64,000 nucleotides of DNA from Perkinsus chesapeaki ATCC PRA-425. Lineage: Eukaryota > Protista > Perkinsozoa. The stretch is taken from positions 34,741-98,740 of the forward strand of contig JAAPAO010000059.1 in NCBI GenBank assembly GCA_013115145.1. Reading direction: 5' to 3'. This document shows positions 24,255 to 38,148 of this stretch, piece by piece (positions within the stretch are counted from its first letter, which is position 1; each line of letters starts with the position of its first letter). The notes under the pieces were generated by a model. The model was not told the origin of the DNA and did no database searches. It saw only the letters and a program-made list of their open reading frames with translations. A program made the translations under genes and the position numbers.

Positions 24255-24686
24255 AATGTAACAAGTAAAGTCCTAACAGATCATCACCATACTTCCACTC
24301 ACGCGAGAGTAAGGTCCGTCCCTCGCCAAAAAGGGCTATAGCGCGCGCCCGGGCGAGTCCGGCCTCAAAAAAAATGTACAGCGTTGCGTGTTAGAGACGT
24401 TGTTGGTATGAAGAGGTTTTTAGAGGCTGTAGATTAAGTTAGCAACTTAGTGGTTATATTAGAGAGATGAACCGGAGGGGTAGGGAGCCACTTAGCTTTT
24501 TCACGTCACGGGATGCCGGGGCTAGAAATTGTAATAATGTCTCTTAGAGTGAAAGGAAGCTTGTTATGTCAGGGGGTCGCTTAGGACCCCTCGGAAAGTC
24601 TTACTATCATTTTCAGCTCAAAAAATAACAAAGTTGTAGATTTGCTGTTCCCTATTGAAATTTCTGTGTAGCCATCAGAGAGTGGC

Positions 24687-25496
24687 ATGATGCTAGATAA
24701 GCAGGATGATGCCTCGAGGGCCGCCGAAGTGGAGAGGAATTTCAATGCCTATTTGAGGACCTCAATATTCGGCCGACACAAAAGTGGTTCTAGGACTCAG
24801 CTGTGAGGCGTTCATACCGACTTTTCCTCAGGTTCCACCCGAATGCGGCAGTCTCAGATAGAGAATCGACCAAGTCCGCCCAAGAGGGACGCCTGCAGCC
24901 ATTCCCTTACCACTGTGTCGGCCCCTTGTACGCGGTTTACTGGACTCCTTGTTGAGGAGGATACATCGTTCGCCGGCTTACCATTGAAGGCCAGGGTCGA
25001 GCGTCTGGCTGAATCATTGGGACATTTGAAACAAGCGCATAATGCAATGCAGAACCAGGTAATGTCGTTGGTGAAGGACGGGGCTTCCATAGCTCTCTGG
25101 CAATTACACTTGTCAGTCGATGCTCTCCGGGTGGTCAAGGCCCATGCCAGGTTCAGCAGAGTCTCGATAGGCTGAGGAGCGAGATGACGGACTCCGCCAA
25201 CGACCTAGCCGAAGTAATGGAACGTGCATCAGGGCAGCTGCGGCAAAATGAGAGGTCGGCTGGCTCGATAATGGTGGTATGTGGCTTATGGCGCTTGTAG
25301 GGAGGCGATGGAGACTAAGTCTGTTTTGGAGGGGCATATAAGTAAGATGGAGATGGCACTGGCTCAACTTGGACGGTATGTGGAGGAGATCGCTGGAAGG
25401 CAAGAGGAAGTTGAGGCTACTGTGAGGGAATTGTCGGTATGGGTGCTTTAGTGGCCATGTTAGATACGGCAAGTTGAGCGAGAAGTTTACGGATAG
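24687..25496 (+). CDS. Coiled-coil hypothetical protein, multi-exon
   Basis: MMLDKQDDASRAAEVERNF; LKARVERLAESLGHLKQAHNAMQNQ; LEGHISKMEMALAQLGRYVEEIAGRQEEVEATVREL heptads joined by short GT-AG introns. Confidence 0.55.
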
Positions 25497-25516
25497 ACCT
25501 ACTTGTTTACTTTGAC

Positions 25517-28500
25517 ATGCACCATTATGATGATGCCTATGGGCGATTTACGAACGACTTGGTCAGCACTTGTGGTGTTATTAAGGCCCATTTTTATTGG
25601 ATATTGTTGTTCAGCTCTTTTGTTCCTTCTGGTACCAATATCAGTTATATATGTCACTACCATCACTGGCAGTATCCTATTCCCAGGAGAACTGGGCAGT
25701 CATGCTCGATGATGCCGACAGATACGCTGTCACGGTCATGTTCATGGTATTACTTGGCAACATCGCCAAACTTATCAATTCGCCCTTACTCAGATTACTT
25801 TGGCGATATTTCTATTTATAATAGATGAGTTTCGCGGCACTCGCCCGAAGGCCTCCACAGCATTCATGCCGGTTTTCTATCCAGATGAGAGCATTCCATG
25901 GTAAGGGGCGTCTGATGGGGGGCATCGGGTCTGAGGGGCTGGATGCTCAGGGCCAAGCTCAACGACTACGAGTACTTCTCTGGCCTTTTCGGGCTCGGAA
26001 TTCGGAAGTGGGCCATCTGGAAGTGGGCAACCGGAGCGATACGTCGCCGTCATGCTAAGTCCCACAAGAGTAGTAGCGGCGGGCAGCCAGTACGCTTGGC
26101 TTATTATTGAGACTATGCTTAGAGTCGACTGAGGAAGGGGAGGAGGTATCCTATCGTGACATGGACCTGCCTTGGGTCACGGTCGTTAATGCGTATATCG
26201 GATATTTGGTCCTGTTCTTGAAGGGCATCTTGAGGGAGTGCTTATGGACAGTGACCTTTAATAAGAGGAAGAATGACAGTGAGAACTGGTGCCCGCAGTG
26301 GTGGAAGGAGTTCTATACTCAACACATGTAACATCATCTACGGTGATATTTCCTATTGGCAATGCTTAGGTACAGAAGGATCGAAGACTGTTGGAACAGG
26401 CCAATATGTTCGGCACCTGGGAGCACGATCGATGTAGCCGTTGCGGTCCTTCGTAGCACGAGTCAGCGCATGTGGCAGGTGTTGGTCCGTTCTCGTCCAA
26501 ATGACATCCTCAAAAGGTTTGGGAAATTCCAGCCCACTGGTGAAGTTCAGAGAGGCTGCATTAATCTGGCCTCATATAACTACCTGGGCTTCGGTGGTAC
26601 CGACAAATACTGTAATAAAGATTGTTGAGCTTTGGACGTATCTTGAGGTCAACTTAAGGTACTCCGTTGGCCATTAAGGCTCTGGACGAGTACGGCTTGG
26701 CTGTATGTGCCTCAAGGCCGGAGTATGGCGGTAAGTCCGGGCTGATTGGGGTGGGCTTGGTGGAATTGGTTTTGTTAGGAACTAATAGACTGCATAACGA
26801 GTTTGAGTCAAAGGTCGCGGCATTTTTGGGAAAGGAAGATGCCCTAGTTATGGGCATGGGTTTCGCCACTAACAGTAATGATAAGGGGGAGACGTGTGCA
26901 CCGAGATCGCCATTAGGAGTATCTTAGGTTGATCCTAGGTCATCACATTCAGGTACTTTCCTTGGAGCCTTGGCTATGACTGAAGGTGGCTCTACTGCTA
27001 AGAAAGTACTACACTGCCTTTCACGGATGCTGTCGGGCACTCAGCTTTGAGTGGTATTTCAGACTCTTTTCGTTTCGGATCAACTGAACCACAAGTCAAT
27101 CGTTGAGGGCGTTAAACAGAGTAGCGCCAAGGTCATCGGATTTAAGCATAATAATATGCATGACCTTGAGAAAATTTTGGATAGAGAGACCCGTACTATG
27201 TGGTGGCAGCGTAGGTTCGTGGCATTGGCCGGGCAGGTTCGGGCAAATGGGCTAAGATCGTTATTATTGTTGAGGGTATTTATTCGATGGAGGGAGAGTT
27301 CTGCCGCTTGAGAGAGACTGTAAGGAAGAAGCAGCAGCAGCTACTGCTTGAATTTGGTTGTTATAATGCTGGCTGCTGTGGTAATCAGGTCTCCTTGAAA
27401 AACAAGTATAACTGTTACTTATGGCTTGATGAGGCTCACTCCATCGGAGCGGTCGGGCCTACTGGACGTGGTATTACTGAACTTTTTGGCGTTGGTAGGC
27501 GCAGCGAAGCACTGGAGGTCCTCGACGGTTTAATTGGTTTATTAGATACTTCGGAGGTTGATATTATGATGGGCACTTTTACTAAGTCGTTCGGTTCTAA
27601 TGGCGGTTACATTGCCAGCACCAACGAGTGCATTCAGGTGCTGTCTGTTTGGGGAGGTTTATCCGCCTATTCGGGAAGCTAGTCTTTCTCAGCACCTTCG
27701 CCGTTGTTCCTTGGGCTGGCTACATGGTGCTGCGATGCCGCCTATGGTAACAGCTCAGGCAATGGCCGCTCTAGATTTACTGTCTACTGAAAGGGGCAAG
27801 GCTAAGGTAGTGGCAGCTGGCTAGGGGGGGGAGGGAGACAGCTTTTGTGCAACAGTTACGTGCTGTACGAGAAAATGCCAACTACCTCCGTGAGGGTCTA
27901 ATGAAGCTCAATTTACGTGTTATCGGCGATATCGATTCCCCTGTTATCTGCGTTATGCTGGTAATAGCTTGGATGGGTTACCTTCGTCTTTGTTATTATC
28001 ACTGATAGGTTCATCCCGAGAAGATTGCTCGCTTCTCTAGGGAATGCCTGAAGAGGAACATTGCGGCTGTTGTGGTAGGTCCATCATCCTGGCTTGGGCA
28101 GTGGGGAGCTTGCTCTGTGCCAGGTGGGGTACCCGGCAACACCAGTGATTCTGTCTCGAGCCAGATTTTGTGTGAGCGCCAGTCACACTAAGGAGCAGTT
28201 GGATGAGACACTCCGTGTCGTTAAAGAGGTCTCCCATATCGTCGGTAATTAGACCACTGGGACCCGGTCGTGTCGCTCGGTAGTTTCGGTCGCACTCGGG
28301 AAATTTTCTTTTGCAAATCGCCGCGGGGAGTGCGTTGGTTATCAACGCACTCATATCACTCATATCACGATATCACGCATATCGGGCAGTACTATGATGC
28401 TTCCTCGTGACTTCTCCCGTGTAGGAGTGCGAGTGACGTAAAAGGGTATATTGATTAACATGAATTTTACCGTACTTGTATATCGTATACAGATATAGTA

Positions 28501-30157
28501 ATAGAATGGAAATATTTCTGGCAGAAGGGTGCATGGTTACACGGTGTCAGGTATTGAGTACGGTAACAACACCGATGAGAATGCAGCCAAGGCATATAGG
28601 AAGTATCTTGCCGAAGCTCCTATTGCGACTGAGCCCCTAGATGGCCTTGAAGCATACTGGAATCCTGAGCCATTGGTGCCTGCTACACTAGAGGAGGACA
28701 GGGAGAATCTGTCGAGCAAAAGTAGGATACGGGAGAGGTTGGTTGGAGGTCCATGTGGAGCGGTAGGCACTTCTGCTACCAACTCTCCCCGAGATAGCGG
28801 CGCCAGTGAGACCGAGGATGAGCAGCAGGCCAAGGGCTTGCTTGATTTCGCCACCATCGATCCTCTGGCATTGCAGCACAAGCCAGATGAGAGGTTGATG
28901 AAGGTTGCTAGGGACGTCGTAAGGGAGAAGGGTGTGGGTGCATGTGGCCCTCGAGGCTTCTATGGTAGCACTGTTCCCTTGGGTTTGGGACCGGAATGAG
29001 TGGCATCAGGTACGACGGTGGAGCACTTGGATCTCGAAAAGGCTATCACTGAGTTCCTGGGCACCGAGGCTTCGATTGTCTACAGCCATCACACTGTGTC
29101 CGATTCTAGTGTGGTAAGTGGTGGTGGAGGTGTTGCCGTCTCCAGGCGGATGATTGGATCCATCAGATCCAAGCATTCATCACCAAGAATGATTTTGTCA
29201 TCGTCCATAAGGACGCGAATCCACACATGTGCATCGGCCTTAACTTGTCCCGCGCTAAGAACATCACTTGGTGGTCCGGAGACATCGCCGAGCTGGCGCA
29301 TTTGGTGGAGACGCAGAGCAAGGAAGTGAAGCTGGCTGCCCGAGCTGGAAGACTTTGGATACTTATGGATAGCAATTATGGAGTCGACTTGGCTCAGGTG
29401 AGTTGAGGAAATATAAGACTGGATAAGATCGCAAGATTTTCCTTTCAAGGTGGTCGAGATTAAGGAGGAATTCGGTGCTTACCTGTTGCTTGATGACACT
29501 TATGGTATTGGAGCCGTCGGCGAGACTGGTCGAGGCTACTGTGAATATTACGGGGTAAGTATGAGCCGATTGCACTGTGATAGTGTAGAGCTGATTTCTC
29601 AGGTTCCACCCTCCTCGGTAGACCTTCTTATTGGATCACTTGAGCACGCTTTCGGTTCCCAAGGTGGATTCTGCGCCGGCAAGCAGACGAGCATCGACCA
29701 TCAGACGCTTTATGGGAGCGGTTACTGCTTCAGTGCTAGTTCCCCACCAGCATCATGCAAGTTTGCTGCCGAGACCATGAGACACTTGGCTGGCAGTGAC
29801 CGTCTAGGTCGCCTTCAGGCTAACGTTGAGCAGCTCAGGCAATGCTTAGAAGATGCCGGTTTGGATCTTCTTACGGACTCCCAGTCGTTTGCGCAGATCG
29901 CGGAGGTCCCCGATGCCCAGCGTGTTGCCAATGCGCTTCAGTCGAGCGGCTTTGCGGTGCAACCATTACTGATATCACCCCTTGAGAAGGGTGGCTTGGC
30001 CGCGGTGGAGCGCAAGAATACCCTTTTGAGAATCTGCGTACGTGCTGATCACACTGCAGCTCAAATCTCCCAGTTCGGTGCCTGTGTTAAACAGCTGGAG
30101 GCCTCAGCTGTGACATCCTGCGCCAAGGGTGATGAGGGCTGCGCCGCCGCTCTGTAA
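25517..30157 (+). CDS. Single-chain serine palmitoyltransferase A: N-terminal TM + LCB2 half fused in frame to LCB1 half
   Basis: LCB2 motifs [33 protein letters not shown] (PLP Lys codon 27584), [21 protein letters not shown]. Phase-1 intron 28245-28550 joins to LCB1 motifs [43 protein letters not shown] (no PLP Lys). 5' exons uncertain. Confidence 0.85.
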
Positions 30158-31218
30158 ATTATGCCTATTCGCGGCCGTTATCGAATTAGTAGCATTCCAT
30201 ACGCCATAAAGCCGCCGTCGGTTCGATTCTACTACGTTTCCTAAGCGTCCCTGTACTTGGCGGTAACAGTATCAGTCTTCCCTGTATGCGTCGCTAAAAG
30301 CTCGACTGTTGAAGCCTATCTCACGGGGTCACTGATGAAGCAGCAGCTATGGTTCACAAGTAGTGTTTTATATCTACGGACGATAATACTATTCTATTGT
30401 TTTTGCCTTGATAAATAAAAGAGGCCATATGTGTCTTTGTCGTCGTTCTGCCGTTGCCGAGGCTTATGTGTAATATTTGTTACAGCTTAAGTCTCGGTTG
30501 GTATTTGTCTGCTACTGTTGGTGATGAGTTTGTTATATATAGGCGAAGCAGCAGCAGCTCATCTCGATGTGATCTATCGAATGTATGGTATGATTTCTAT
30601 TCCTCACCATTGTAATCCTTGCTAGAATGCCGCAGCCGCAGCAAACGCCATCTGCTGCTGCTGCTGCTGTTGCTTAGAATCTGTACTGATATGGTCATAA
30701 ATGGTAGCTCCTACTGTAGCCCACTATTCTTTAACAGGGAGCAGGAGCATTGTCAAGATTTGCTATTCACCGTCCGTCGGGCGAATCGAGTAACGGATTA
30801 ATAATAATACGGCTTTGGTTGTTGGAGTGTTCAGGGATCGGGCGGCCCAGTTGGTATGGGGACAGTTTTTGTGACGCGGCTTAGAACTTCAACTGCTCAT
30901 AGTCCTGGGTCAATATGGCATTTCAGCCTCCCTTTTCCGAATAGTCACTTGTGTCGTATCGGGATACCTATTTATCCTACCCACTTGAACTCCTCCTCTT
31001 ATCATTGGCTGTCTGTCCATTGATAAAGTTAGTATTGTGCAGCGGTGTCCCCTAGGATGTACTAGCCGTAGATATATGCCTGGAATTGCACGCATTTAGG
31101 GATGTTGGCAGTCCTGAATATATCTTAATCAGTATCGAGTCAGTCTTGCCTTGATTCTATTGTCATCTTTGTGCAGTTCATTTACTTGCCTAACACACAT
31201 ACCCCTTGCTTAAATAGG

Positions 31219-34200
31219 ATGATCGCTGAGGCTACAATGTTGGCTGAATCCGCGTGCAATTCGACGACAGTTGCCGATATCGCTTCCGGCATGGCTCCGC
31301 CTCATGATGGAGCCCTTTCGGATGTCGACACAACCGTCTACACATTCACGGTTGTCTTCATGGTCGGGCTGCTCCTCTCACTTGGTTGTTGTTCACTTTT
31401 CCTTTTCAGATGGCGCTGGCTGTGCTTTTGTTCGTAGCAGATGACAAGCGCGGAACCCGGCCGAAATCTTCCATGGCCTTTTACACTGTATTCTATCCCG
31501 ATGAATCGATTCCTTGGTAGGTTGTCGCAGCGCTACCTCTGATCGTGTATCGCTTGTTCAGGGGGCACTTCGCATTCAATGACTACATTGGCGGCCTCTT
31601 CGGCCTCGGTATCAACAAGGAGACCATTCTTAAGTTCGTCTCCAAATATGTCAGGAAATCTCCTGCAGGCAAGCTGTCCGTTTTGCTGATTTATTTGCTT
31701 CACGCTGGTCTTGGCAGATTCGAGCCCCAAGGCAGCGGGGACCAAGTCGATCGCACCGAGGTTTGAGCATCAGTATCTTACGTGGCCCACAGTGTTACAC
31801 GCCTACTGGCAGTTTGCCGTTCTGTTTTTGAAGGGCATCTCCAAGGAGGCCTTATGGACCATCACATTCAGTAAGAACGAGAACGATACCGAGAACTGGA
31901 ACACCGAGTGGTGGAAGGAGTTCTACACGCAGCATCTGTGAGTTAGTCGCGAAACCTGTGGGATGATGATTGTGACGCCGTGACGCCGCCGTAGGTATCA
32001 CCGTATCGAGGACTGCTTCAACCAGGTCATCAGTTCCGCGCCGGGCAGCACCGTCGACGTAAGTCTTCGACGTAAGTGGTTATGTATCTATGTTCAGGTT
32101 TGCCTGAGAGACCGTCCGCATAATATCTTTAAACGGTATGGCAGATTAGAGCTCACCGGGAAGGTCCGTCGAGGTTGCATCAATCTTGCCTCTTACAACT
32201 ACCTTGGTTTCGGCGGCAGAGATGATTACTGCTCTCCCAAAGTCATCGAGGCTGTCAAGGACTATGGTTTCGCTTCTGGAGTGTCTAGCCGAGCCGAGGC
32301 AGGCGGCACCAATAGCCTCCATGTGAAGCTAGAGTCGATGGTTGCTGACTACCTTGGCAAGGAGGATGCCTTGGTCATGGGCATGGGCTTCGCCACTAAC
32401 AGTAGGAAAGATACTCCTTATCAGCAGCTTCTTGGAAGTGACGTTATCAGGTATGCTTTTGGCAGCAGTTGCGCTCACCTCCCCTCAGTACGCCAACAAG
32501 CCGGTAAGCAGCTTTTGTGGAGTTTTGGACATTTAAAGGTTGTCACAGACGCTATTCGTCTCGGACTCCTTGAACCACAAATCTATCGTCGAAGGCGTGA
32601 AACAGAGCACGGCGAAGGTCATCGGCTTCAAGCATAACGATATGCGCGATCTGGAGAATGTCCTTGACAGAGAAACTCGTAGGGAGGGAGGACGCGGGTT
32701 CGATCCCCGGCAGCAGCATCTATTTTAAATAGGCTCTGGCAAGTGGGCTAAAATTATCATCCTCACTGAAGGTGTCTACTCTATGGAAGGCGAGTTCTGT
32801 CGACTCAGAGAGATTGTACGTCACCATCGGTCTTTTTCTTCTTATTGAATTCTACGTCCCTATAGGTTACTCTAAAGCATCGCTACCACTGTTATCTGTG
32901 GCTCGATGAAGCTCACTCTATCGGAGCTGTCGGTCCTACTGGCCGTGGCGTAACAGAGCTTCTCGGTGTTGGTAGGCCGCCCCCCACTTAGGAAGGCTTT
33001 AATGAATAATGGCCGCCTCAGATACCAAGCATGTCGATATGATGATGGGCACATTCACCAAGTCGTTTGGCTCCAACGGTGGCTATGTCGCCGGTGATAA
33101 GACTCTAATAGATGTAAGGCGGCTCGGGAGAATCCAGGTTAAATAATCACAACTAGATCTTCTATTGTTCTATGATAAAAGTACCTCGTAGTAGATAGCT
33201 AGATGAACTTATATGATAGCTTGTAGCTAGCGTATGTGCATCATCAACTCAGTAAATATACCACAAGCTATACCACAGCTATATTATTATTGTACGTTGA
33301 TGACATGGTAAAGCACACAAAAATAATGAATGATGGAAATATTTACTTTTCCGCTTCAGTACCTGCGCGCGACTTCAACTGGATATCTGCATGCTTCGGC
33401 CATGACACCGATGGTAACCTCCCAAATCATTGCGGCCTTTGAGGTCATGAAGACGCCTAGAGGACAGGATAAGGCAAGAAGCCTGTTTTCCACGGTGCAG
33501 TGCTCCCAGTGCTTCGCTCCGCCTTTTTTAGATCCGGGCTATTCGTGAGAATTCCAACTACCTCCGCAGTGAACTGAGGAAGCTGAAGCTTACCGTTATC
33601 GGCGATATCGATTCCCCGGTCATCTGTGTTCTCCTGTGTGTGCCGGAGACGATTCCGGCCTTCTTCCGGGCAGCTCTGGAGCGCAACCTTGCCTGTGTTG
33701 TGGTGAGGCCACGTTGCGCACTATGAAGATTTTATCAGCCTACGTATCTTAGGTTGGATACCCGGCTGTGCCCGTGCTTCTGTCCAGAGTACGTTTCTGC
33801 GTCAGTGCCAGTCACACCAAGGAGCAGATCGATTACACCGTGGCTATGGTGAAGGAGGTTGCGAAGGAGACCGGTACGCTGCCTCCTGTTTGGTGGTCAG
33901 CAGCCTCCACCGTAGGTATCTGCTACGACAACTCCGTGTCGGACGAGGAAGCCGCTTCCTATCGCCACTGGCTGTCTCACGCCCCGCTCGAGACCACGGA
34001 GCTACCGCATCTTTCTGACTATTGGACGCCGGACGATCTGGTGCCCAATTGCAAGTTTGAAGTTCCTCATAACGGTTTGATATTCCCTTCCGAAGATACA
34101 AGTATGTATACTCCTCAACTAGGTTCCTGCAGCATCGCTTGCCGTAGGTACGGTGTCCAGCACACCTGTGGGCGGCTGCGACCGTGATGAGCCTCTACAA

Positions 34201-35751
34201 GAGTTCGCCACATTCGACCCTCTTTCCCTTCTCCATGACCCACCGAAGGCAGTTACTGATCCGGCCTTCTCGGTCATCGAGGAGAGGGGCGTCGGCGCCT
34301 GCGGTCCTAGAGGCTTCTACGGTACCTTGCTCTCACTGTGGGTTCCTGTATATGTCGCGAGTTTTGCAGGCACTACTCTGGAGCATCTTGAGCTTGAGAA
34401 GGTCATCAAGGAATTCTTGGAGACCGAGGCTGCTATTCTATACAGTCACCACGCTCTCACTGCCTCCAGCGCGGTAGGTTATCCTCATCCCGGTGGGCGC
34501 GGCGGGGGATGTGGTTTGTCAGGCCCAAGCCTTTATCAAGAAGAATGACTTTGTTATTATCCACAAGTATGCAACCTACGGCATTCGAACCGGTGTGAAG
34601 CTGTCCCGATGCCGAAACGTGACTTGGTGGTCTGGGGACTTGGACGAACTGTTCGAGCTTGTCGAGGCTAAGATGCGCCAAGTGAAGCTATCCAGCCATG
34701 CTTGCCGAGTCTGGGTCGTTATGGATGCCCAGTTTGGTGTTGATCTCAGAAAGGTAAGCCTCTTGTTGTCCAAAGCTGCACTCGGCGTTTATTACTCCTC
34801 TATGGGGAAATGGCTCAGCTGGAGGAGACATTGCCTGTAAAGACGGGGCAAATCCAACGGTGCAGAGTACTTGAACTTCTGTCATCACATCTGCGTTGTA
34901 TGACTATATTTTTGCTAGTATGCGATCGTGCATGCCGATATAGTATAAATTAGTGAGGCGATAAGTGTGGTACAGTAGTAGGTATGGTCGTACTTGTTCA
35001 CTGTGGTCAAGATTTATTATACCGTTTTTCTCACAAATCGCCATGTGATATATACTTATTAAATGTCCATACCGTCTGTATACGTCTGCTCAGGTCGTTG
35101 ATATCAAGGATGAGTTCGGCGCATACTTGCTTCTCGATGACAGCTATGGTATCGGCACAGTCGGCGCTACAGGCCGTGGCTACTGTGAGCACTACGGGGT
35201 AAGAACATCCTACCACCACTGCCAATAAGGCAGCTGCTTCTCTGTAGGTTCGATGCTCTTCGGTGGATATTCTTGTGGGCTCTCTAGAACAGACCTTCGG
35301 TTCCCAAGGAGGATTCTGTGCCGGCAAACAGACTACCATCGATCACCAGACGCTTTATGCCAGCGGTTACTGCTTCAGTGCTAGTTCCCCGCCAGCATCG
35401 TGCAAGGTTGCTACTGAGGCAATCAAGCGAGTTCAAGGAAGCGAGCGTCTGGCTCGCATCCAAGCCAACACTCGACGCCTCCGACGTGACCTGGAGGAGA
35501 GTGGCGCGGACATGCTTACCGATGGTCAATCGTTCACGCAGGTCGTCAGAGTGGCTGATGCTCAGAAGGTGGCCTCAGCTATGCAAGAAAGGGGATTTGT
35601 TGTTCAACCATTGCTGAGCTCACCTTTAGAAAATGAAGGCCTAGCAGCCGAGAAGAACACATTGCTCAGGATAGCCGTAGGCGCTCATCACAGCCCTGAG
35701 GCCATCGATCAGTGTGTTAACTGCCTTAAAGAGGTCTCTGTGGCTTGCTAA
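31219..35751 (+). CDS. Single-chain serine palmitoyltransferase B (tandem paralog, LCB2-LCB1 fusion)
   Basis: Same motifs: [30 protein letters not shown] (Lys codon 33060), [21 protein letters not shown]; 42-nt intron 33874-33915; [34 protein letters not shown]; stop at 35751. Confidence 0.88.
32690..32718 (+). other. tRNA 3'-half-like fragment in SPT-B intron
   Basis: GGACGCGGGTTCGATCCCCGGCAGCAGCA: T-arm plus acceptor-like 3' strand, with TTTT shortly after; no 5' half seen. Confidence 0.5.
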
Positions 35752-36299
35752 CTTGGCCCTTTATTACCCGTCGTGGCGTACTATTAATTTGCAAGCTTTC
35801 TGCAATAAAATGCTATCGACGAGCTCTTTACTGTACAGTACAGTTATTCCCAGTAAATTATCTTACCTATCATCATTTGCTAACAGCTGCTCTCCTCCTC
35901 CTAGCCTGCATCAATTATGCTGTTCTAGCCTGGAGCGCTGCTGCATATATCATATTCCTTTGTTGCCTTTGGGAAGCGGCCCCCCCGTCATCGCCAGGGC
36001 CCAGCAAGTTCCTCTTCTTGGTTCCTTGCTAGCAGATCCTTGTTTCCGCTAGTGTCGCTTTGTAGTGCTGAGGCCCTGGTGATGGCCCGTCTAAAGGGTG
36101 GCCTGCGGCCCAGTTATCCGGGACACAATCGTCCAAAAGAGAAACAATAAATTTCTTCCGTCTGTCTCTTCCTTACCGTCGTTTTGCGTTGAAGTCAGTC
36201 ATGCCCAGGCGCCTATGGGAGGACCCAGTTGCCACTAGCGCATGCGTGCAGCCTTCGTTGCCATCGGTTCCCTCGTATTTATAGCCTGCGGTGTAGCAT

Positions 36300-38148
36300 G
36301 TGAGCGCCTCGGTGAGCAGCAGCAGCAGTGAAGAGGCTCTGGTTGGTAGGTGTGTATAGGGGCAAGCAGCTACATGACGATATCATATTTTCTAATCTAG
36401 AAGTCGGGTACGGCAAGTATATGATAGGTAATCGGTAGTGTATCATCTCGACAGTCAAAGGCACTATCCTCAGGGCTAGGGTGCGGATGTCTGATAGCTG
36501 CGGTGGTCGGTGCTCTGTCAGCTTATAGTCGTAAACGGTGGCTGCTATCTGGGTAAGGAGGACCGCATGGCTCTATTGGCCTGATCCTCTTAGATACGTT
36601 GCTCTTTCGGTGTTGCTGGGAGGGAGCCTTCTCACAGTGGCATGTGTGGGCATGTTCCCAGCTGTTTGTTCCTTTATCGGCGTAATTGACAGGTTCTGGC
36701 GGCTATTAGCAGGACTGATGCTGATAGATTTGATACCGTGTGTGGGCGGAAGCGGGATACCGGTAGTAGTGGGGAGGGGCACTAAGTTCGGATACCAACC
36801 TTCAAAGCAACCTCGGGTCGTGCTGATGAAAAAGGGCCACACTGCCCAGCATTCATTCCAAATAACGCTGGATCTATGATAGCCGTAATCAGTGTAAGGT
36901 CTTTTGTGGAACTGGCCGTGTTCAATTCGGTTATTAAGTAGTTCCAAGACTCCCTTGGAGGGAGTCCCTCTGCACATATGTCTACCCCTTTCATATCCGA
37001 CTTCCCTAGCGCTTCCCTGCTATGTGGGAGCTGCTCTACTCTCTGATAGGTGCACTTTATGGCTCTGAGAGAATGGTCCGGCTGATGCATGAATATGACA
37101 GTATGAATCAGGCGCTACATAACTGCATGCGAAGGTACTCCTTCACTATACTGGAGGACAGGTAGCCTCTCATTGGTAGTCGTACCAATACGTCTGGCGA
37201 AGCCCCAGGCCAACTGATGTCCCTGGACAGCTGCCCAGGGGCTTTGGATGACCAGCTGGTGCCATGGGAAGCCCATCGGTGATCGTGGAACAGCTAGGCT
37301 TGCTAAGGGAGGATATTAGGTACTGGGGGCTGTTTAAGGAGTCTGAAAGGAGGTATCATTGTGGTGGAGCATGTGATGCTGGATCACCGTTGTTTGGATG
37401 GCCGCAGGATGTTGGCAAAGGAGGGGTAGTAGTGGAGGGGGGCTCTTACGGTAGGCGATATATGAAACGTTATTTGGGGTCCAGTGGGTCGTAAGCTGTA
37501 TAGCTTCACGAGCATGGGTGGTGGGAACTAGCTCACAGTAATCCTATTGGGCTTGCCGGTTTGTCCAGGAAGATTGACAGACCGTATCTAATCTACCATT
37601 TCTGGGACGAATCAATGCAATCAATCAATTGTAATGCAACTAACAACTCGAAGGAGCGTTGGGATCTCCTGGATAGTCATAACCATGGTATCTTGCCTAT
37701 AGGGCAATAGGACCGACTGTTTCTTGCTCTGCTTCTTGTAGGTACTGCCTCCTGATAATGCTGATGACTTGCTATTGGACCCTTGTATTAAGGGGATATT
37801 GTTGGACATTCGACAGCAGGCAAATACCAACGCGTAGCAACCTTCCCTCTATATTTGATAGGAGTCTGGTCAGGACCATGTCTCTAGCAGCGGCTGTGCC
37901 TTTGTTGCTATCGGGCTTCTGTGGGGCCCTCCTGTGTTGCAGTAGAGCACAGAAGAGGTTGAATAGGAGAAGGCAGAATAGGCTCTATCAGCTAGCCCCA
38001 CGAGGCAAGTCCAGTTCGAGCATTCAAGTCTGGGTCGAAAAGTGCTTCAGGCACCGAACCGAGCGTCATATCGATCATGCTTGAGGACGGCGGCGGTAGC
38101 AGCTCGGATGAGAGTGATGATTACGATTATTAGCAGTCATGATGCCAT
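36300..38148 (-). CDS. Probable multi-exon hypothetical gene, structure unresolved, head-to-head with the nuclease
   Basis: Series of GT-AG bounded open segments (ARYHGYDYPGDPNAP, TVCQFPGQTGKPNRIT|LTTHWTPNNVSYIAY, ORF 36782-37090); signal-like 5' segment contains an in-frame TGA. Confidence 0.35.

What the first reader, a model, noticed from the sequence alone, without database searches (positions are those of the whole stretch)
25517..35751. Two tandem single-chain LCB2-LCB1 serine palmitoyltransferase genes
Most eukaryotes encode SPT as separate LCB1 and LCB2 genes; Toxoplasma-type apicomplexans use a bacterial-like homodimer; a single-chain LCB2-LCB1 enzyme is established for the Emiliania huxleyi coccolithovirus, where it shifts acyl-CoA preference. 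Here both genes run from a complete LCB2 (GTFTKS Lys) through a linker into an LCB1 ([16 protein letters not shown], no Lys). The joining intron is at the same position and phase in both, and the LCB1 half has no start or TM1 of its own. This suggests a fused sphingolipid-entry enzyme, duplicated and diverged, in a marine alveolate.
Basis: partly seen in the sequence, partly recalled or inferred. Interest (0 to 1): 0.85.

Follow-up and report, generated by a model that had tools for sequence, protein, structure and literature searches.

The report
Tandem fused LCB2-LCB1 SPT genes, Perkinsus
The window (Perkinsus chesapeaki) carries two neighbouring genes that each encode both halves of serine palmitoyltransferase, the first enzyme of sphingolipid synthesis, as one protein; the reading is correct, but this fused form is already annotated in Perkinsus and is widespread in protists.

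Summary
Gene 1 (25651-30157, 23 exons, 1041 aa) and gene 2 (31237-35751, 20 exons, 1033 aa) are 60% identical paralogs. Each has an N-terminal membrane helix, an LCB2/SPTLC2-type domain with the PLP lysine (TFTKS), a roughly 110-residue linker, and an LCB1/SPTLC1-type domain (CGPRGFYG, His in place of the lysine).

A phase-1 intron sits at the same junction in both genes: 28245-28550 and 33874-33915. In gene 2 it is 42 nt, in frame and free of stops, so the DNA reads open from LCB2 into LCB1. The LCB1 halves have no Met for 100-205 codons.

Gene 2 is identical to the public 1039-aa P. chesapeaki SPT model. Fused orthologs are annotated in P. marinus and P. olseni, and the tandem pair is conserved in P. 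olseni. P. marinus keeps only a stop-ridden remnant of gene 2.

About 100 fused LCB2-then-LCB1 proteins were retrieved, including Amoebophrya, a dinoflagellate, Ostreococcus, Mastigamoeba, transcriptome ORFs and coccolithovirus-like contigs. Their LCB2 halves form one clade.

RNA contigs confirm splicing of gene 2 but do not reach either junction.

Verdict: a real, correctly read, uncharacterised member of a known kind. Interest is modest. An overlapping first-stage note (s1-234947) gave the same reading.

The parts
25651..30157 (+). Gene 1: single-chain LCB2-LCB1 SPT, 23 exons, 1041 aa. It is the ortholog of P. marinus P0001/P0151 and P. olseni P0152.
   Evidence: Spliced alignment to P0152. 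86% identity to P0152 and 85% to P0151. No internal stops.
25714..25838 (+). Gene 1 N-terminal hydrophobic helix (residues about 22-47), the only strong membrane-spanning candidate. It is split by intron 25747-25793.
   Evidence: Kyte-Doolittle 19-residue window peaks at 2.29. The same feature is present in the other Perkinsus fused proteins examined (gene 2, P0001, P0152) and in P0004 and P0008.
27575..27589 (+). Gene 1 TFTKS motif. Lys435 is the predicted PLP Schiff-base lysine of the LCB2 half.
   Evidence: This lysine column is invariant in 22 fused proteins. The region matches SPTLC2/LCB2a at 1.5e-25.
28245..28550 (+). Gene 1 junction intron between the LCB2 and LCB1 halves: GT..AG, phase 1, 306 nt, unusually long. 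Left unspliced, it gives a stop two codons in (..HIVGN*).
   Evidence: Its orthologs in P. olseni and P. marinus are 46 and 52 nt at the same place and phase.
28551..30157 (+). Gene 1 linker plus LCB1 half. It contains YWNPEPLVP at 28655-28681, CGPRGFYG at 28943-29011 and GSLEH at 29633-29647, and ends with the stop codon at 30155-30157.
   Evidence: Best PDB matches are SPTLC1 and Arabidopsis LCB1. His aligns with the Lys position of LCB2, and with Asn in human SPTLC1 and His in Arabidopsis LCB1.
30158..31236 (.). Spacer of about 1.08 kb between the two genes.
   Evidence: Gene models. No Rfam match in 24500-36800.
31237..35751 (+). Gene 2: single-chain LCB2-LCB1 SPT, 20 exons, 1033 aa. It corresponds to public protein P0154 (P. 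chesapeaki), corrected at two introns.
   Evidence: P0154 maps at 100% identity to most exons. Spliced model. 90% identical to P. olseni P0153.
31327..31448 (+). Gene 2 N-terminal hydrophobic helix (residues about 31-55). It is split by intron 31363-31409.
   Evidence: Hydropathy peak of 2.49. The AF2 model has a helix at residues 31-57.
31669..31717 (+). GC-AG intron of gene 2, removed in RNA contigs. The public model P0154 mis-splices here.
   Evidence: RNA joint 31664/31714 with a 4-nt ambiguity. The sequence reads GCAAGC..GGCAG. The resulting peptide matches P. olseni.
33051..33065 (+). Gene 2 TFTKS motif. Lys447 is the predicted PLP lysine.
33474..33531 (+). Probable second GC-AG intron of gene 2. 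The public model uses a later GT donor and so adds 7 residues.
   Evidence: Sequence GCAAGA..TTTTAG. The peptide RGQDK|IRAIREN matches gene 1 and P. olseni. No RNA covers it.
33753..34184 (+). Uninterrupted ORF of gene 2 that runs from the last LCB2 exon through the junction intron into the LCB1 linker.
33874..33915 (+). Gene 2 junction intron: GT..AG, phase 1, 42 nt, in frame and without a stop.
   Evidence: The same intron is in the public model P0154.
33916..35751 (+). Gene 2 linker plus LCB1 half. It contains DDLVP at 34032-34046, CGPRGFYG at 34300-34371 and GSLE at 35278-35289, and ends with the stop codon at 35749-35751.

Best explanation
Each gene encodes a complete eukaryotic-type serine palmitoyltransferase on one polypeptide.

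The parts, in order:
- An N-terminal helix that anchors the protein in the ER membrane.
- An LCB2-type domain that carries the PLP cofactor on Lys435 (gene 1) or Lys447 (gene 2).
- A linker of about 110 residues that keeps the LCB1-type W.PEPLVP segment but lacks LCB1's first transmembrane helix.
- An LCB1-type domain without a lysine.

The LCB1 domain packs against the LCB2 domain as an intramolecular version of the LCB1/LCB2 heterodimer. This gives one active site that condenses serine with an acyl-CoA to 3-ketosphinganine.

The fusion is old. It is shared with other perkinsids, Syndiniales, dinoflagellates, Mamiellales, Mastigamoeba and coccolithoviruses. The whole fused gene was duplicated in tandem in the Perkinsus lineage before its species split. 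Both copies are kept under purifying selection in P. chesapeaki and P. olseni. Gene 2 has decayed in P. marinus, so gene 1 is probably the core enzyme and gene 2 an accessory isozyme.

Shown here: gene structure, domain identity, conserved catalytic residues, ORF continuity in gene 2, conservation, and splicing and expression of the gene 2 5' half.

Inferred: a single mRNA for gene 1, intramolecular pairing, ER topology, enzymatic activity, and any difference in substrate preference between the copies.
For: Domain identity:
- PDB sequence matches are SPTLC2/LCB2a for the N half and SPTLC1/LCB1 for the C half.
- Pfam finds two Aminotran_1_2 stretches.
- In 22 fused proteins the SYNYLG, GFATN, LNH, DEA(H)S, Lys and RxRFC columns are invariant in the N half, and C-x-x-R-x-x-Y-G, GSLE and GGF in the C half.

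Fusion:
- Open frame 33753-34184 across the gene 2 junction.
- A P. marinus-like contig (L003, P0264) also has an open frame across the gene-1-type junction.
- The junction introns are phase 1 at the same site in five genes, and 42-55 nt long in four of them.
- No Met for 54-205 residues after the junction.
- In the linker pN is 0.09-0.25 against pS of 0.65-0.76 between species.
- Fused complete ORFs exist in MMETSP and Trinity transcriptomes and on roughly 3.5-kb contigs.
- All of about 100 two-domain proteins have the order LCB2 then LCB1.

The AF2 model of P0154 has pTM 0.83, with both domains confident. Its best structural matches are LCB2a/SPTLC2 (TM 0.92 by target), and SPTLC1 also matches.

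Duplication and history:
- The tree places gene 1 and gene 2 in sister clades, each containing P. olseni, for both halves. The fused LCB2 halves are one clade, SH-aLRT 99.
- The tandem pair is present in P. olseni.
- P. marinus has only a remnant with stops.

Expression: RNA contigs remove nine gene 2 introns exactly as modelled.
Against: No read or contig spans either junction, and gene 1 had no coverage at all in the two small RNA runs. A single fused mRNA is therefore not shown for this organism.

Gene 1's junction intron is 306 nt, six times the usual size. Reading through it stops two codons in, so an LCB2-only product by intron retention cannot be excluded.

Domain pairing rests on a predicted model, and the inter-domain contacts could not be inspected. 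Activity, localisation and partners (ORM, small subunits) are untested. The 5' end of gene 1 is uncertain.
Confidence: 0.88

Rival explanations
1. The fusion is a gene-model artefact. LCB2 and LCB1 would be adjacent but separate genes. The 'junction intron' would be a short spacer whose AG is a spliced-leader acceptor, and the two subunits would be made from separate mRNAs.
For: Perkinsus uses spliced-leader trans-splicing (established knowledge). In gene 1, P. olseni and P. marinus, the unspliced junction gives a stop within 2-14 codons, so LCB2 could end there. No junction-spanning RNA was obtained.
Against: Gene 2 and the P0264 allele read open through the junction. There is no in-frame Met for 54-205 codons downstream, yet that stretch is conserved and under purifying selection. 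The site, phase and length (42-55 nt) are those of ordinary Perkinsus introns. Transcriptome-derived complete fused ORFs exist in relatives. Both halves share one tree.
Confidence: 0.05
2. Only one of the two copies is a working enzyme. The other, most likely gene 2, would be on its way to loss or would have taken on a non-catalytic or regulatory role.
For: P. marinus keeps only a stop-ridden fragment of gene 2, so gene 2 is dispensable in one species. Gene 1 was not seen in the two small RNA runs.
Against: Both P. chesapeaki copies have intact frames and all invariant catalytic residues. For gene 2 between P. chesapeaki and P. olseni, dN/dS is about 0.03 in both halves. Gene 2 is transcribed and spliced.
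Confidence: 0.07

Closest known systems
Coccolithovirus (EhV-86) single-chain SPT (Han et al. 2006, as summarised in PMC6148460 and PMC5371807)
   Same: The domain order is the same: an LCB2-like N half with the PLP lysine, then an LCB1-like C half without it, on one chain. A viral 870-aa ORF (L005) and its 98%-identical database twin P0025 fall inside the same fused LCB2 clade.
   Different: The viral protein is about 170 residues shorter. It was not scored for an N-terminal helix here. It is only about 35-42% identical to the Perkinsus enzymes and is not their nearest relative. The Perkinsus genes are cellular, intron-rich and duplicated. The C14-CoA preference shown for the virus is not known for Perkinsus.
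Public Perkinsus models: P. marinus ATCC 50983 'serine palmitoyltransferase, putative' (P0001, P0151), P. olseni (P0152, P0153, P0155) and P. chesapeaki (P0154)
   Same: P0154 is gene 2 itself. P0152 and P0151 are 85-86% identical to gene 1. All are fused two-domain models. PMC5371807 already lists P. marinus among the best BLAST hits of the EhV SPT.
   Different: No paper in the searchable library describes the Perkinsus enzyme as a fusion or notes the tandem pair. No P. chesapeaki model for gene 1 turned up. P0154 mis-splices two GC-AG introns. The P. olseni models merge neighbouring genes.
Canonical heteromeric SPT (human SPTLC1/SPTLC2, yeast Lcb1/Lcb2, Arabidopsis LCB1/LCB2a; PDB 7K0I, 8C80, 7YJK)
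   Same: Both domain types and their signature residues are present. Predicted fold TM is 0.87-0.92 to SPTLC2/LCB2a chains and 0.82 to SPTLC1.
   Different: There are two genes and two chains in the canonical enzyme. Its LCB1 has its own start and a first transmembrane helix, which the Perkinsus LCB1 half lacks. The fused protein instead has a helix in front of the LCB2 domain.
Apicomplexan (Toxoplasma) bacterial-type SPT (PMC5519370)
   Same: The reaction is the same, and the organism also belongs to the Myzozoa.
   Different: The Toxoplasma enzyme is a single-domain, bacterial-derived, homodimer-type protein. The Perkinsus enzyme is the eukaryotic LCB2+LCB1 type.

Membership tests
Single-chain LCB2-LCB1 serine palmitoyltransferase | The N-terminal alpha-oxoamine-synthase domain is of LCB2 type and has the PLP lysine (T-F-T-K-S) and the His/Asp PLP ligands. 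| tested here: met
   SPTLC2/LCB2a are the best PDB matches at 1.5e-25. TFTKS, LNHKS and LDEAHS are present in both genes, and most of their residues, the lysine included, are invariant or nearly so in 22 fused proteins.
Single-chain LCB2-LCB1 serine palmitoyltransferase | The C-terminal domain is of LCB1 type: no PLP lysine, and the CGPRGFYG signature is present. | tested here: met
   SPTLC1/LCB1 are the best matches. His occupies the lysine position, as in Arabidopsis LCB1. Named SPT1/LCB1 proteins are retrieved with this half.
Single-chain LCB2-LCB1 serine palmitoyltransferase | Both domains lie in one reading frame of one gene, in the order LCB2 then LCB1. | tested here: met
   Gene 2 has an open frame, 33753-34184, across the junction. 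Gene 1 is joined by a conserved phase-1 intron. The order is identical in about 100 homologs.
Single-chain LCB2-LCB1 serine palmitoyltransferase | Both domains are expressed as a single mRNA and polypeptide. | tested here: inconclusive
   RNA contigs cover 31409-33021 only, and none reaches a junction. Indirect support comes from fused complete ORFs in relatives' transcriptomes.
Single-chain LCB2-LCB1 serine palmitoyltransferase | The protein shares ancestry with the coccolithovirus enzyme and other fused SPTs. | tested here: met
   The LCB2 halves of 37 fused proteins, including the virus-like P0025, form one clade with SH-aLRT 99 (quick tree). For the LCB1 halves a single origin is not excluded.
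Single-chain LCB2-LCB1 serine palmitoyltransferase | The enzyme catalyses serine + acyl-CoA -> 3-ketosphinganine. | not testable with these tools
   This needs a microsomal assay or yeast complementation.
Bacterial-type homodimeric SPT (Toxoplasma-like) | The protein has a single catalytic domain carrying the lysine and has bacterial affinity. | tested here: not met
   There are two domains. The N half matches eukaryotic LCB2 at 1e-25, against 2e-8 for bacterial SPT.

The most novel reading that the evidence does not exclude
The single-chain LCB2-LCB1 enzyme is not a viral curiosity. It would be the normal cellular SPT of a wide, scattered set of protists: perkinsids, Syndiniales, dinoflagellates, Mamiellales, Archamoebae and haptophyte-like lineages. 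It would descend from one ancient fusion, or from a fusion spread by gene transfer, and the coccolithovirus gene would be one branch of it. In Perkinsus the tandem pair would be two isozymes with different acyl-CoA or amino-acid preferences, one of which P. marinus has discarded.
Probability: 0.4. Interest if true: 0.45.

Novelty: new member of a known kind. Interest (0 to 1): 0.33.

Why it matters
Major sphingolipid reviews present the fused SPT only as a coccolithovirus chimera (PMC6148460). This locus and the roughly 100 homologs retrieved show that the same architecture serves as a cellular enzyme in many protists.

Perkinsus is a culturable, transfectable oyster and clam parasite. It offers a natural single-chain SPT in two diverged copies, which could be used to study several questions:
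- How SPT works without a separate LCB1 membrane helix.
- How ORM and small subunits, if present, regulate a fused enzyme.
- Whether the paralogs make different long-chain bases.

It also sharpens the contrast with apicomplexans, which replaced the eukaryotic enzyme with a bacterial one. The practical gain is modest, because the gene models are already public.

Tried and rejected
- RNA evidence for the junctions. Only two small RNA runs hold this stretch.
- Short database proteins crossing the gene-1 junction. The best hit, P0264, turned out to be a genomic ORF with the intron retained in frame, not a cDNA.
- Papers. Monier 2009 and Ziv 2016 are not held, so whether the E. huxleyi host enzyme is described there as fused rests on my memory only.
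- ssSPT-like or other Pfam domains in the N-terminal 140-150 residues: none found.
- Functional RNAs or repeats in the long introns. There was no Rfam match, and the only repeats are the paralogous exons.
- Exact-pattern search for P0006 in viral contigs failed. The profile search succeeded.
- A separate LCB1 gene in Perkinsus. None appeared among 120 listed hits to the LCB1 half. This is weak evidence of absence.
- Lookup of P0153 in the contig index: not on record.
Full report
**What is there.**
The stretch 25.5-35.8 kb holds two collinear coding regions on the + strand. They match each other exon by exon at 71-82% nucleotide identity and 60% protein identity.

I built a spliced-alignment routine, guided by orthologous proteins, and obtained complete models.
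- Gene 1: 23 exons, 25651-30157, 1041 aa.
- Gene 2: 20 exons, 31237-35751, 1033 aa.
- Introns are mostly 39-78 nt.
- All 19 introns of gene 2 are shared with gene 1 in position and phase. Gene 1 has three more.

**Which organism, and what is already public.**
An exhaustive HMMER search with the C-terminal exon of gene 1 and a word-indexed search with its best hit returned fused proteins annotated as serine palmitoyltransferase in three species:
- Perkinsus marinus: P0001 (1042 aa) and P0151 (1047 aa).
- P. olseni: P0152, P0153 and P0155.
- P. chesapeaki: P0154 (1039 aa).

P0154 maps to the exons of gene 2 at 100% identity over most of them. The window is therefore P. chesapeaki, and gene 2 is already a public fused model.

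Gene 1 is 85-86% identical to P0151 and P0152. No P. chesapeaki model for gene 1 turned up. A 2017 review states that the best BLAST hits of the coccolithovirus SPT include P. marinus (PMC5371807).

**Domain identity.**
- The exon with the lysine motif matches Arabidopsis LCB2a and human SPTLC2 at about 1e-25. The best chain that is not SPTLC2/LCB2, a bacterial SPT, scores 2e-8.
- The last exon matches human SPTLC1 and Arabidopsis LCB1 best.
- In that alignment the residue opposite the LCB2 lysine is His in Perkinsus, Asn in human SPTLC1 and His in Arabidopsis LCB1.
- Searching with the C half of P0154 retrieves proteins named serine palmitoyltransferase 1/LCB1 from animals, amoebozoans and green algae.
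- Pfam sees two Aminotran_1_2 stretches.
- In an alignment of 22 fused proteins the PLP-binding and substrate-binding columns of the N half are invariant or nearly so: SYNYLG, GFATN, LNH, DEAHS, the lysine and RxRFC. The same holds for the LCB1 signatures of the C half: [15 protein letters not shown] and GYCFSAS. Both Perkinsus paralogs keep them all.

**Is it really one gene?**
- In gene 2 the junction intron (33874-33915) is 42 nt, in frame and free of stops. The genomic frame is open from 33753 to 34184, from LCB2 into the LCB1 linker.
- In gene 1 the intron is 306 nt and must be spliced. Read through, it stops after two codons.
- The same phase-1 intron sits at the same residue in P. olseni gene 1 (46 nt), P. 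olseni gene 2 (55 nt) and P. marinus gene 1 (52 nt).
- A P. marinus-like contig has an in-frame 51-nt version, again giving an open frame across the junction (P0264).
- After the junction there is no Met for 54-205 codons. In gene 2 the first one lies beyond the CGPRGFYG motif.
- The linker is still conserved. Between species its non-synonymous difference is 0.09-0.25, against 0.65-0.76 synonymous.
- Fused complete ORFs from MMETSP and Trinity transcriptomes, and ORFs of about 1000-1100 aa on contigs of about 3.5 kb, show that relatives make such mRNAs.

Direct RNA evidence here is partial. Two small RNA runs hold spliced contigs of gene 2 from 31409 to 33021, with nine introns removed as modelled. 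They do not reach a junction and do not cover gene 1.

**Membrane topology.**
Each protein has one strong hydrophobic helix near its N terminus: residues about 22-47 in gene 1 and 31-55 in gene 2. There is none in the LCB1 half.

The linker begins just where canonical LCB1 resumes after its first transmembrane helix (the W.PEPLVP segment). From established SPT topology, both catalytic domains face the cytosol. An LCB1 half joined to the cytosolic C terminus of LCB2 therefore cannot keep a single extra membrane pass. The new N-terminal helix probably takes over anchoring. This step is inference.

An AlphaFold2 model of P0154 built with the 22-sequence alignment has mean pLDDT 79.5 and pTM 0.83. 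Both domains are confident; residues 1-143 and 657-680 are not. Its best solved matches are LCB2a/SPTLC2 (TM 0.87-0.92 by target), with SPTLC1 also matched.

**History.**
Of the proteins retrieved, 103 have two such domains. All but three are ordered LCB2 then LCB1, with the lysine motif in the first. Named sources include:
- Amoebophrya.
- the dinoflagellate Effrenium.
- Ostreococcus.
- Mastigamoeba.

A profile scan of viral contigs found two giant-virus contigs with fused ORFs of 870 and 875 aa. The first is 98% identical to P0025.

I built a tree of both halves of 37 fused proteins together with 24 stand-alone LCB1 and LCB2 sequences (quick search, SH-aLRT only).
- All fused LCB2 halves fall in one clade (99).
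- 35 of the 37 fused LCB1 halves fall in one group (91).
- Internal groupings are congruent between the halves.
- Gene 1 and gene 2 are sister clades, each containing P. olseni.

So the whole fused gene duplicated before the Perkinsus species split. The tandem pair is present in P. olseni. In P. marinus the position after the gene-1 ortholog holds only a fragment of the gene-2 LCB1 half, with stops and frameshifts. Between P. chesapeaki and P. olseni, synonymous sites are near saturation while pN is 0.05-0.12 in both halves of both genes.

**Verdict.**
The kind is known: single-chain SPT has been shown experimentally for the coccolithovirus (PMC6148460). These very genes are already in public annotation.

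What appears undescribed in the searchable literature:
- that Perkinsus uses a fused enzyme.
- that it has a conserved tandem pair, with loss in P. marinus.
- how widespread the cellular fused form is.

I rate it a new member of a known kind, with modest interest.

Noticed in passing
window 31669-31717 and 33474-33531: Gene 2 has two GC-AG introns. The first is confirmed by RNA contigs and the second is inferred from orthologs. The public P. chesapeaki model P0154 mis-splices both. It replaces a conserved segment (..[13 protein letters not shown]..) and adds 7 residues (ARSLFST).
   Followed up: partly
L002:15667-16141 (P. marinus GG682149.1): This is a remnant of the gene-2 paralog: an LCB1-half fragment of about 130 residues with in-frame stops and frameshifts. 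It lies just downstream of the intact gene-1 ortholog, so P. marinus ATCC 50983 seems to have lost gene 2.
   Followed up: partly
window 31714-32404: The two RNA runs hold two versions of the gene 2 exons. One is identical to the window. The other differs at about 10% of positions, mostly third codon positions. It could be a second haplotype, a further copy or a related strain.
   Followed up: no
window 24948-25421: Three short exons upstream of gene 1 on the same strand encode a coiled-coil-like peptide. The P. olseni model P0152 merges the equivalent into its SPT gene, but the P. marinus models do not. It is unclear whether these are 5' exons of gene 1 or a small separate gene.
   Followed up: no
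window 28245-28550, 33114-33359, 34754-35093: These three introns are 246-340 nt long in genes whose other introns are 39-78 nt. No Rfam match or repeat explains them. The 306-nt one is the gene 1 junction intron.
   Followed up: partly
proteins P0183, P0184, P0031, P0191 (database hits): Some fused SPTs carry a third part. P0183 and P0184 (metagenomic, nearest to the coccolithovirus enzyme) have a PAP2 lipid-phosphatase domain. The Mamiellales proteins of about 1400 aa have a long C-terminal extension, hydrophobic by eye in the printed sequence.
   Followed up: no
window from about 36538 onward: The P. olseni model P0153 (1300 aa) joins its gene-2 ortholog to a downstream tetraspanin-like protein (PF00335). 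A hydrophobic ORF lies at the corresponding place in the window. The join is probably a model merge rather than a real fusion.
   Followed up: no
L004:1911-4538 and L005:1911-4523 (IMG/VR giant-virus contigs): These contigs carry fused SPT ORFs of 875 and 870 aa. The second has the size of the EhV-86 enzyme and is 98% identical to P0025. About 30 other viral contigs carry single-domain relatives of the same enzyme superfamily.
   Followed up: partly
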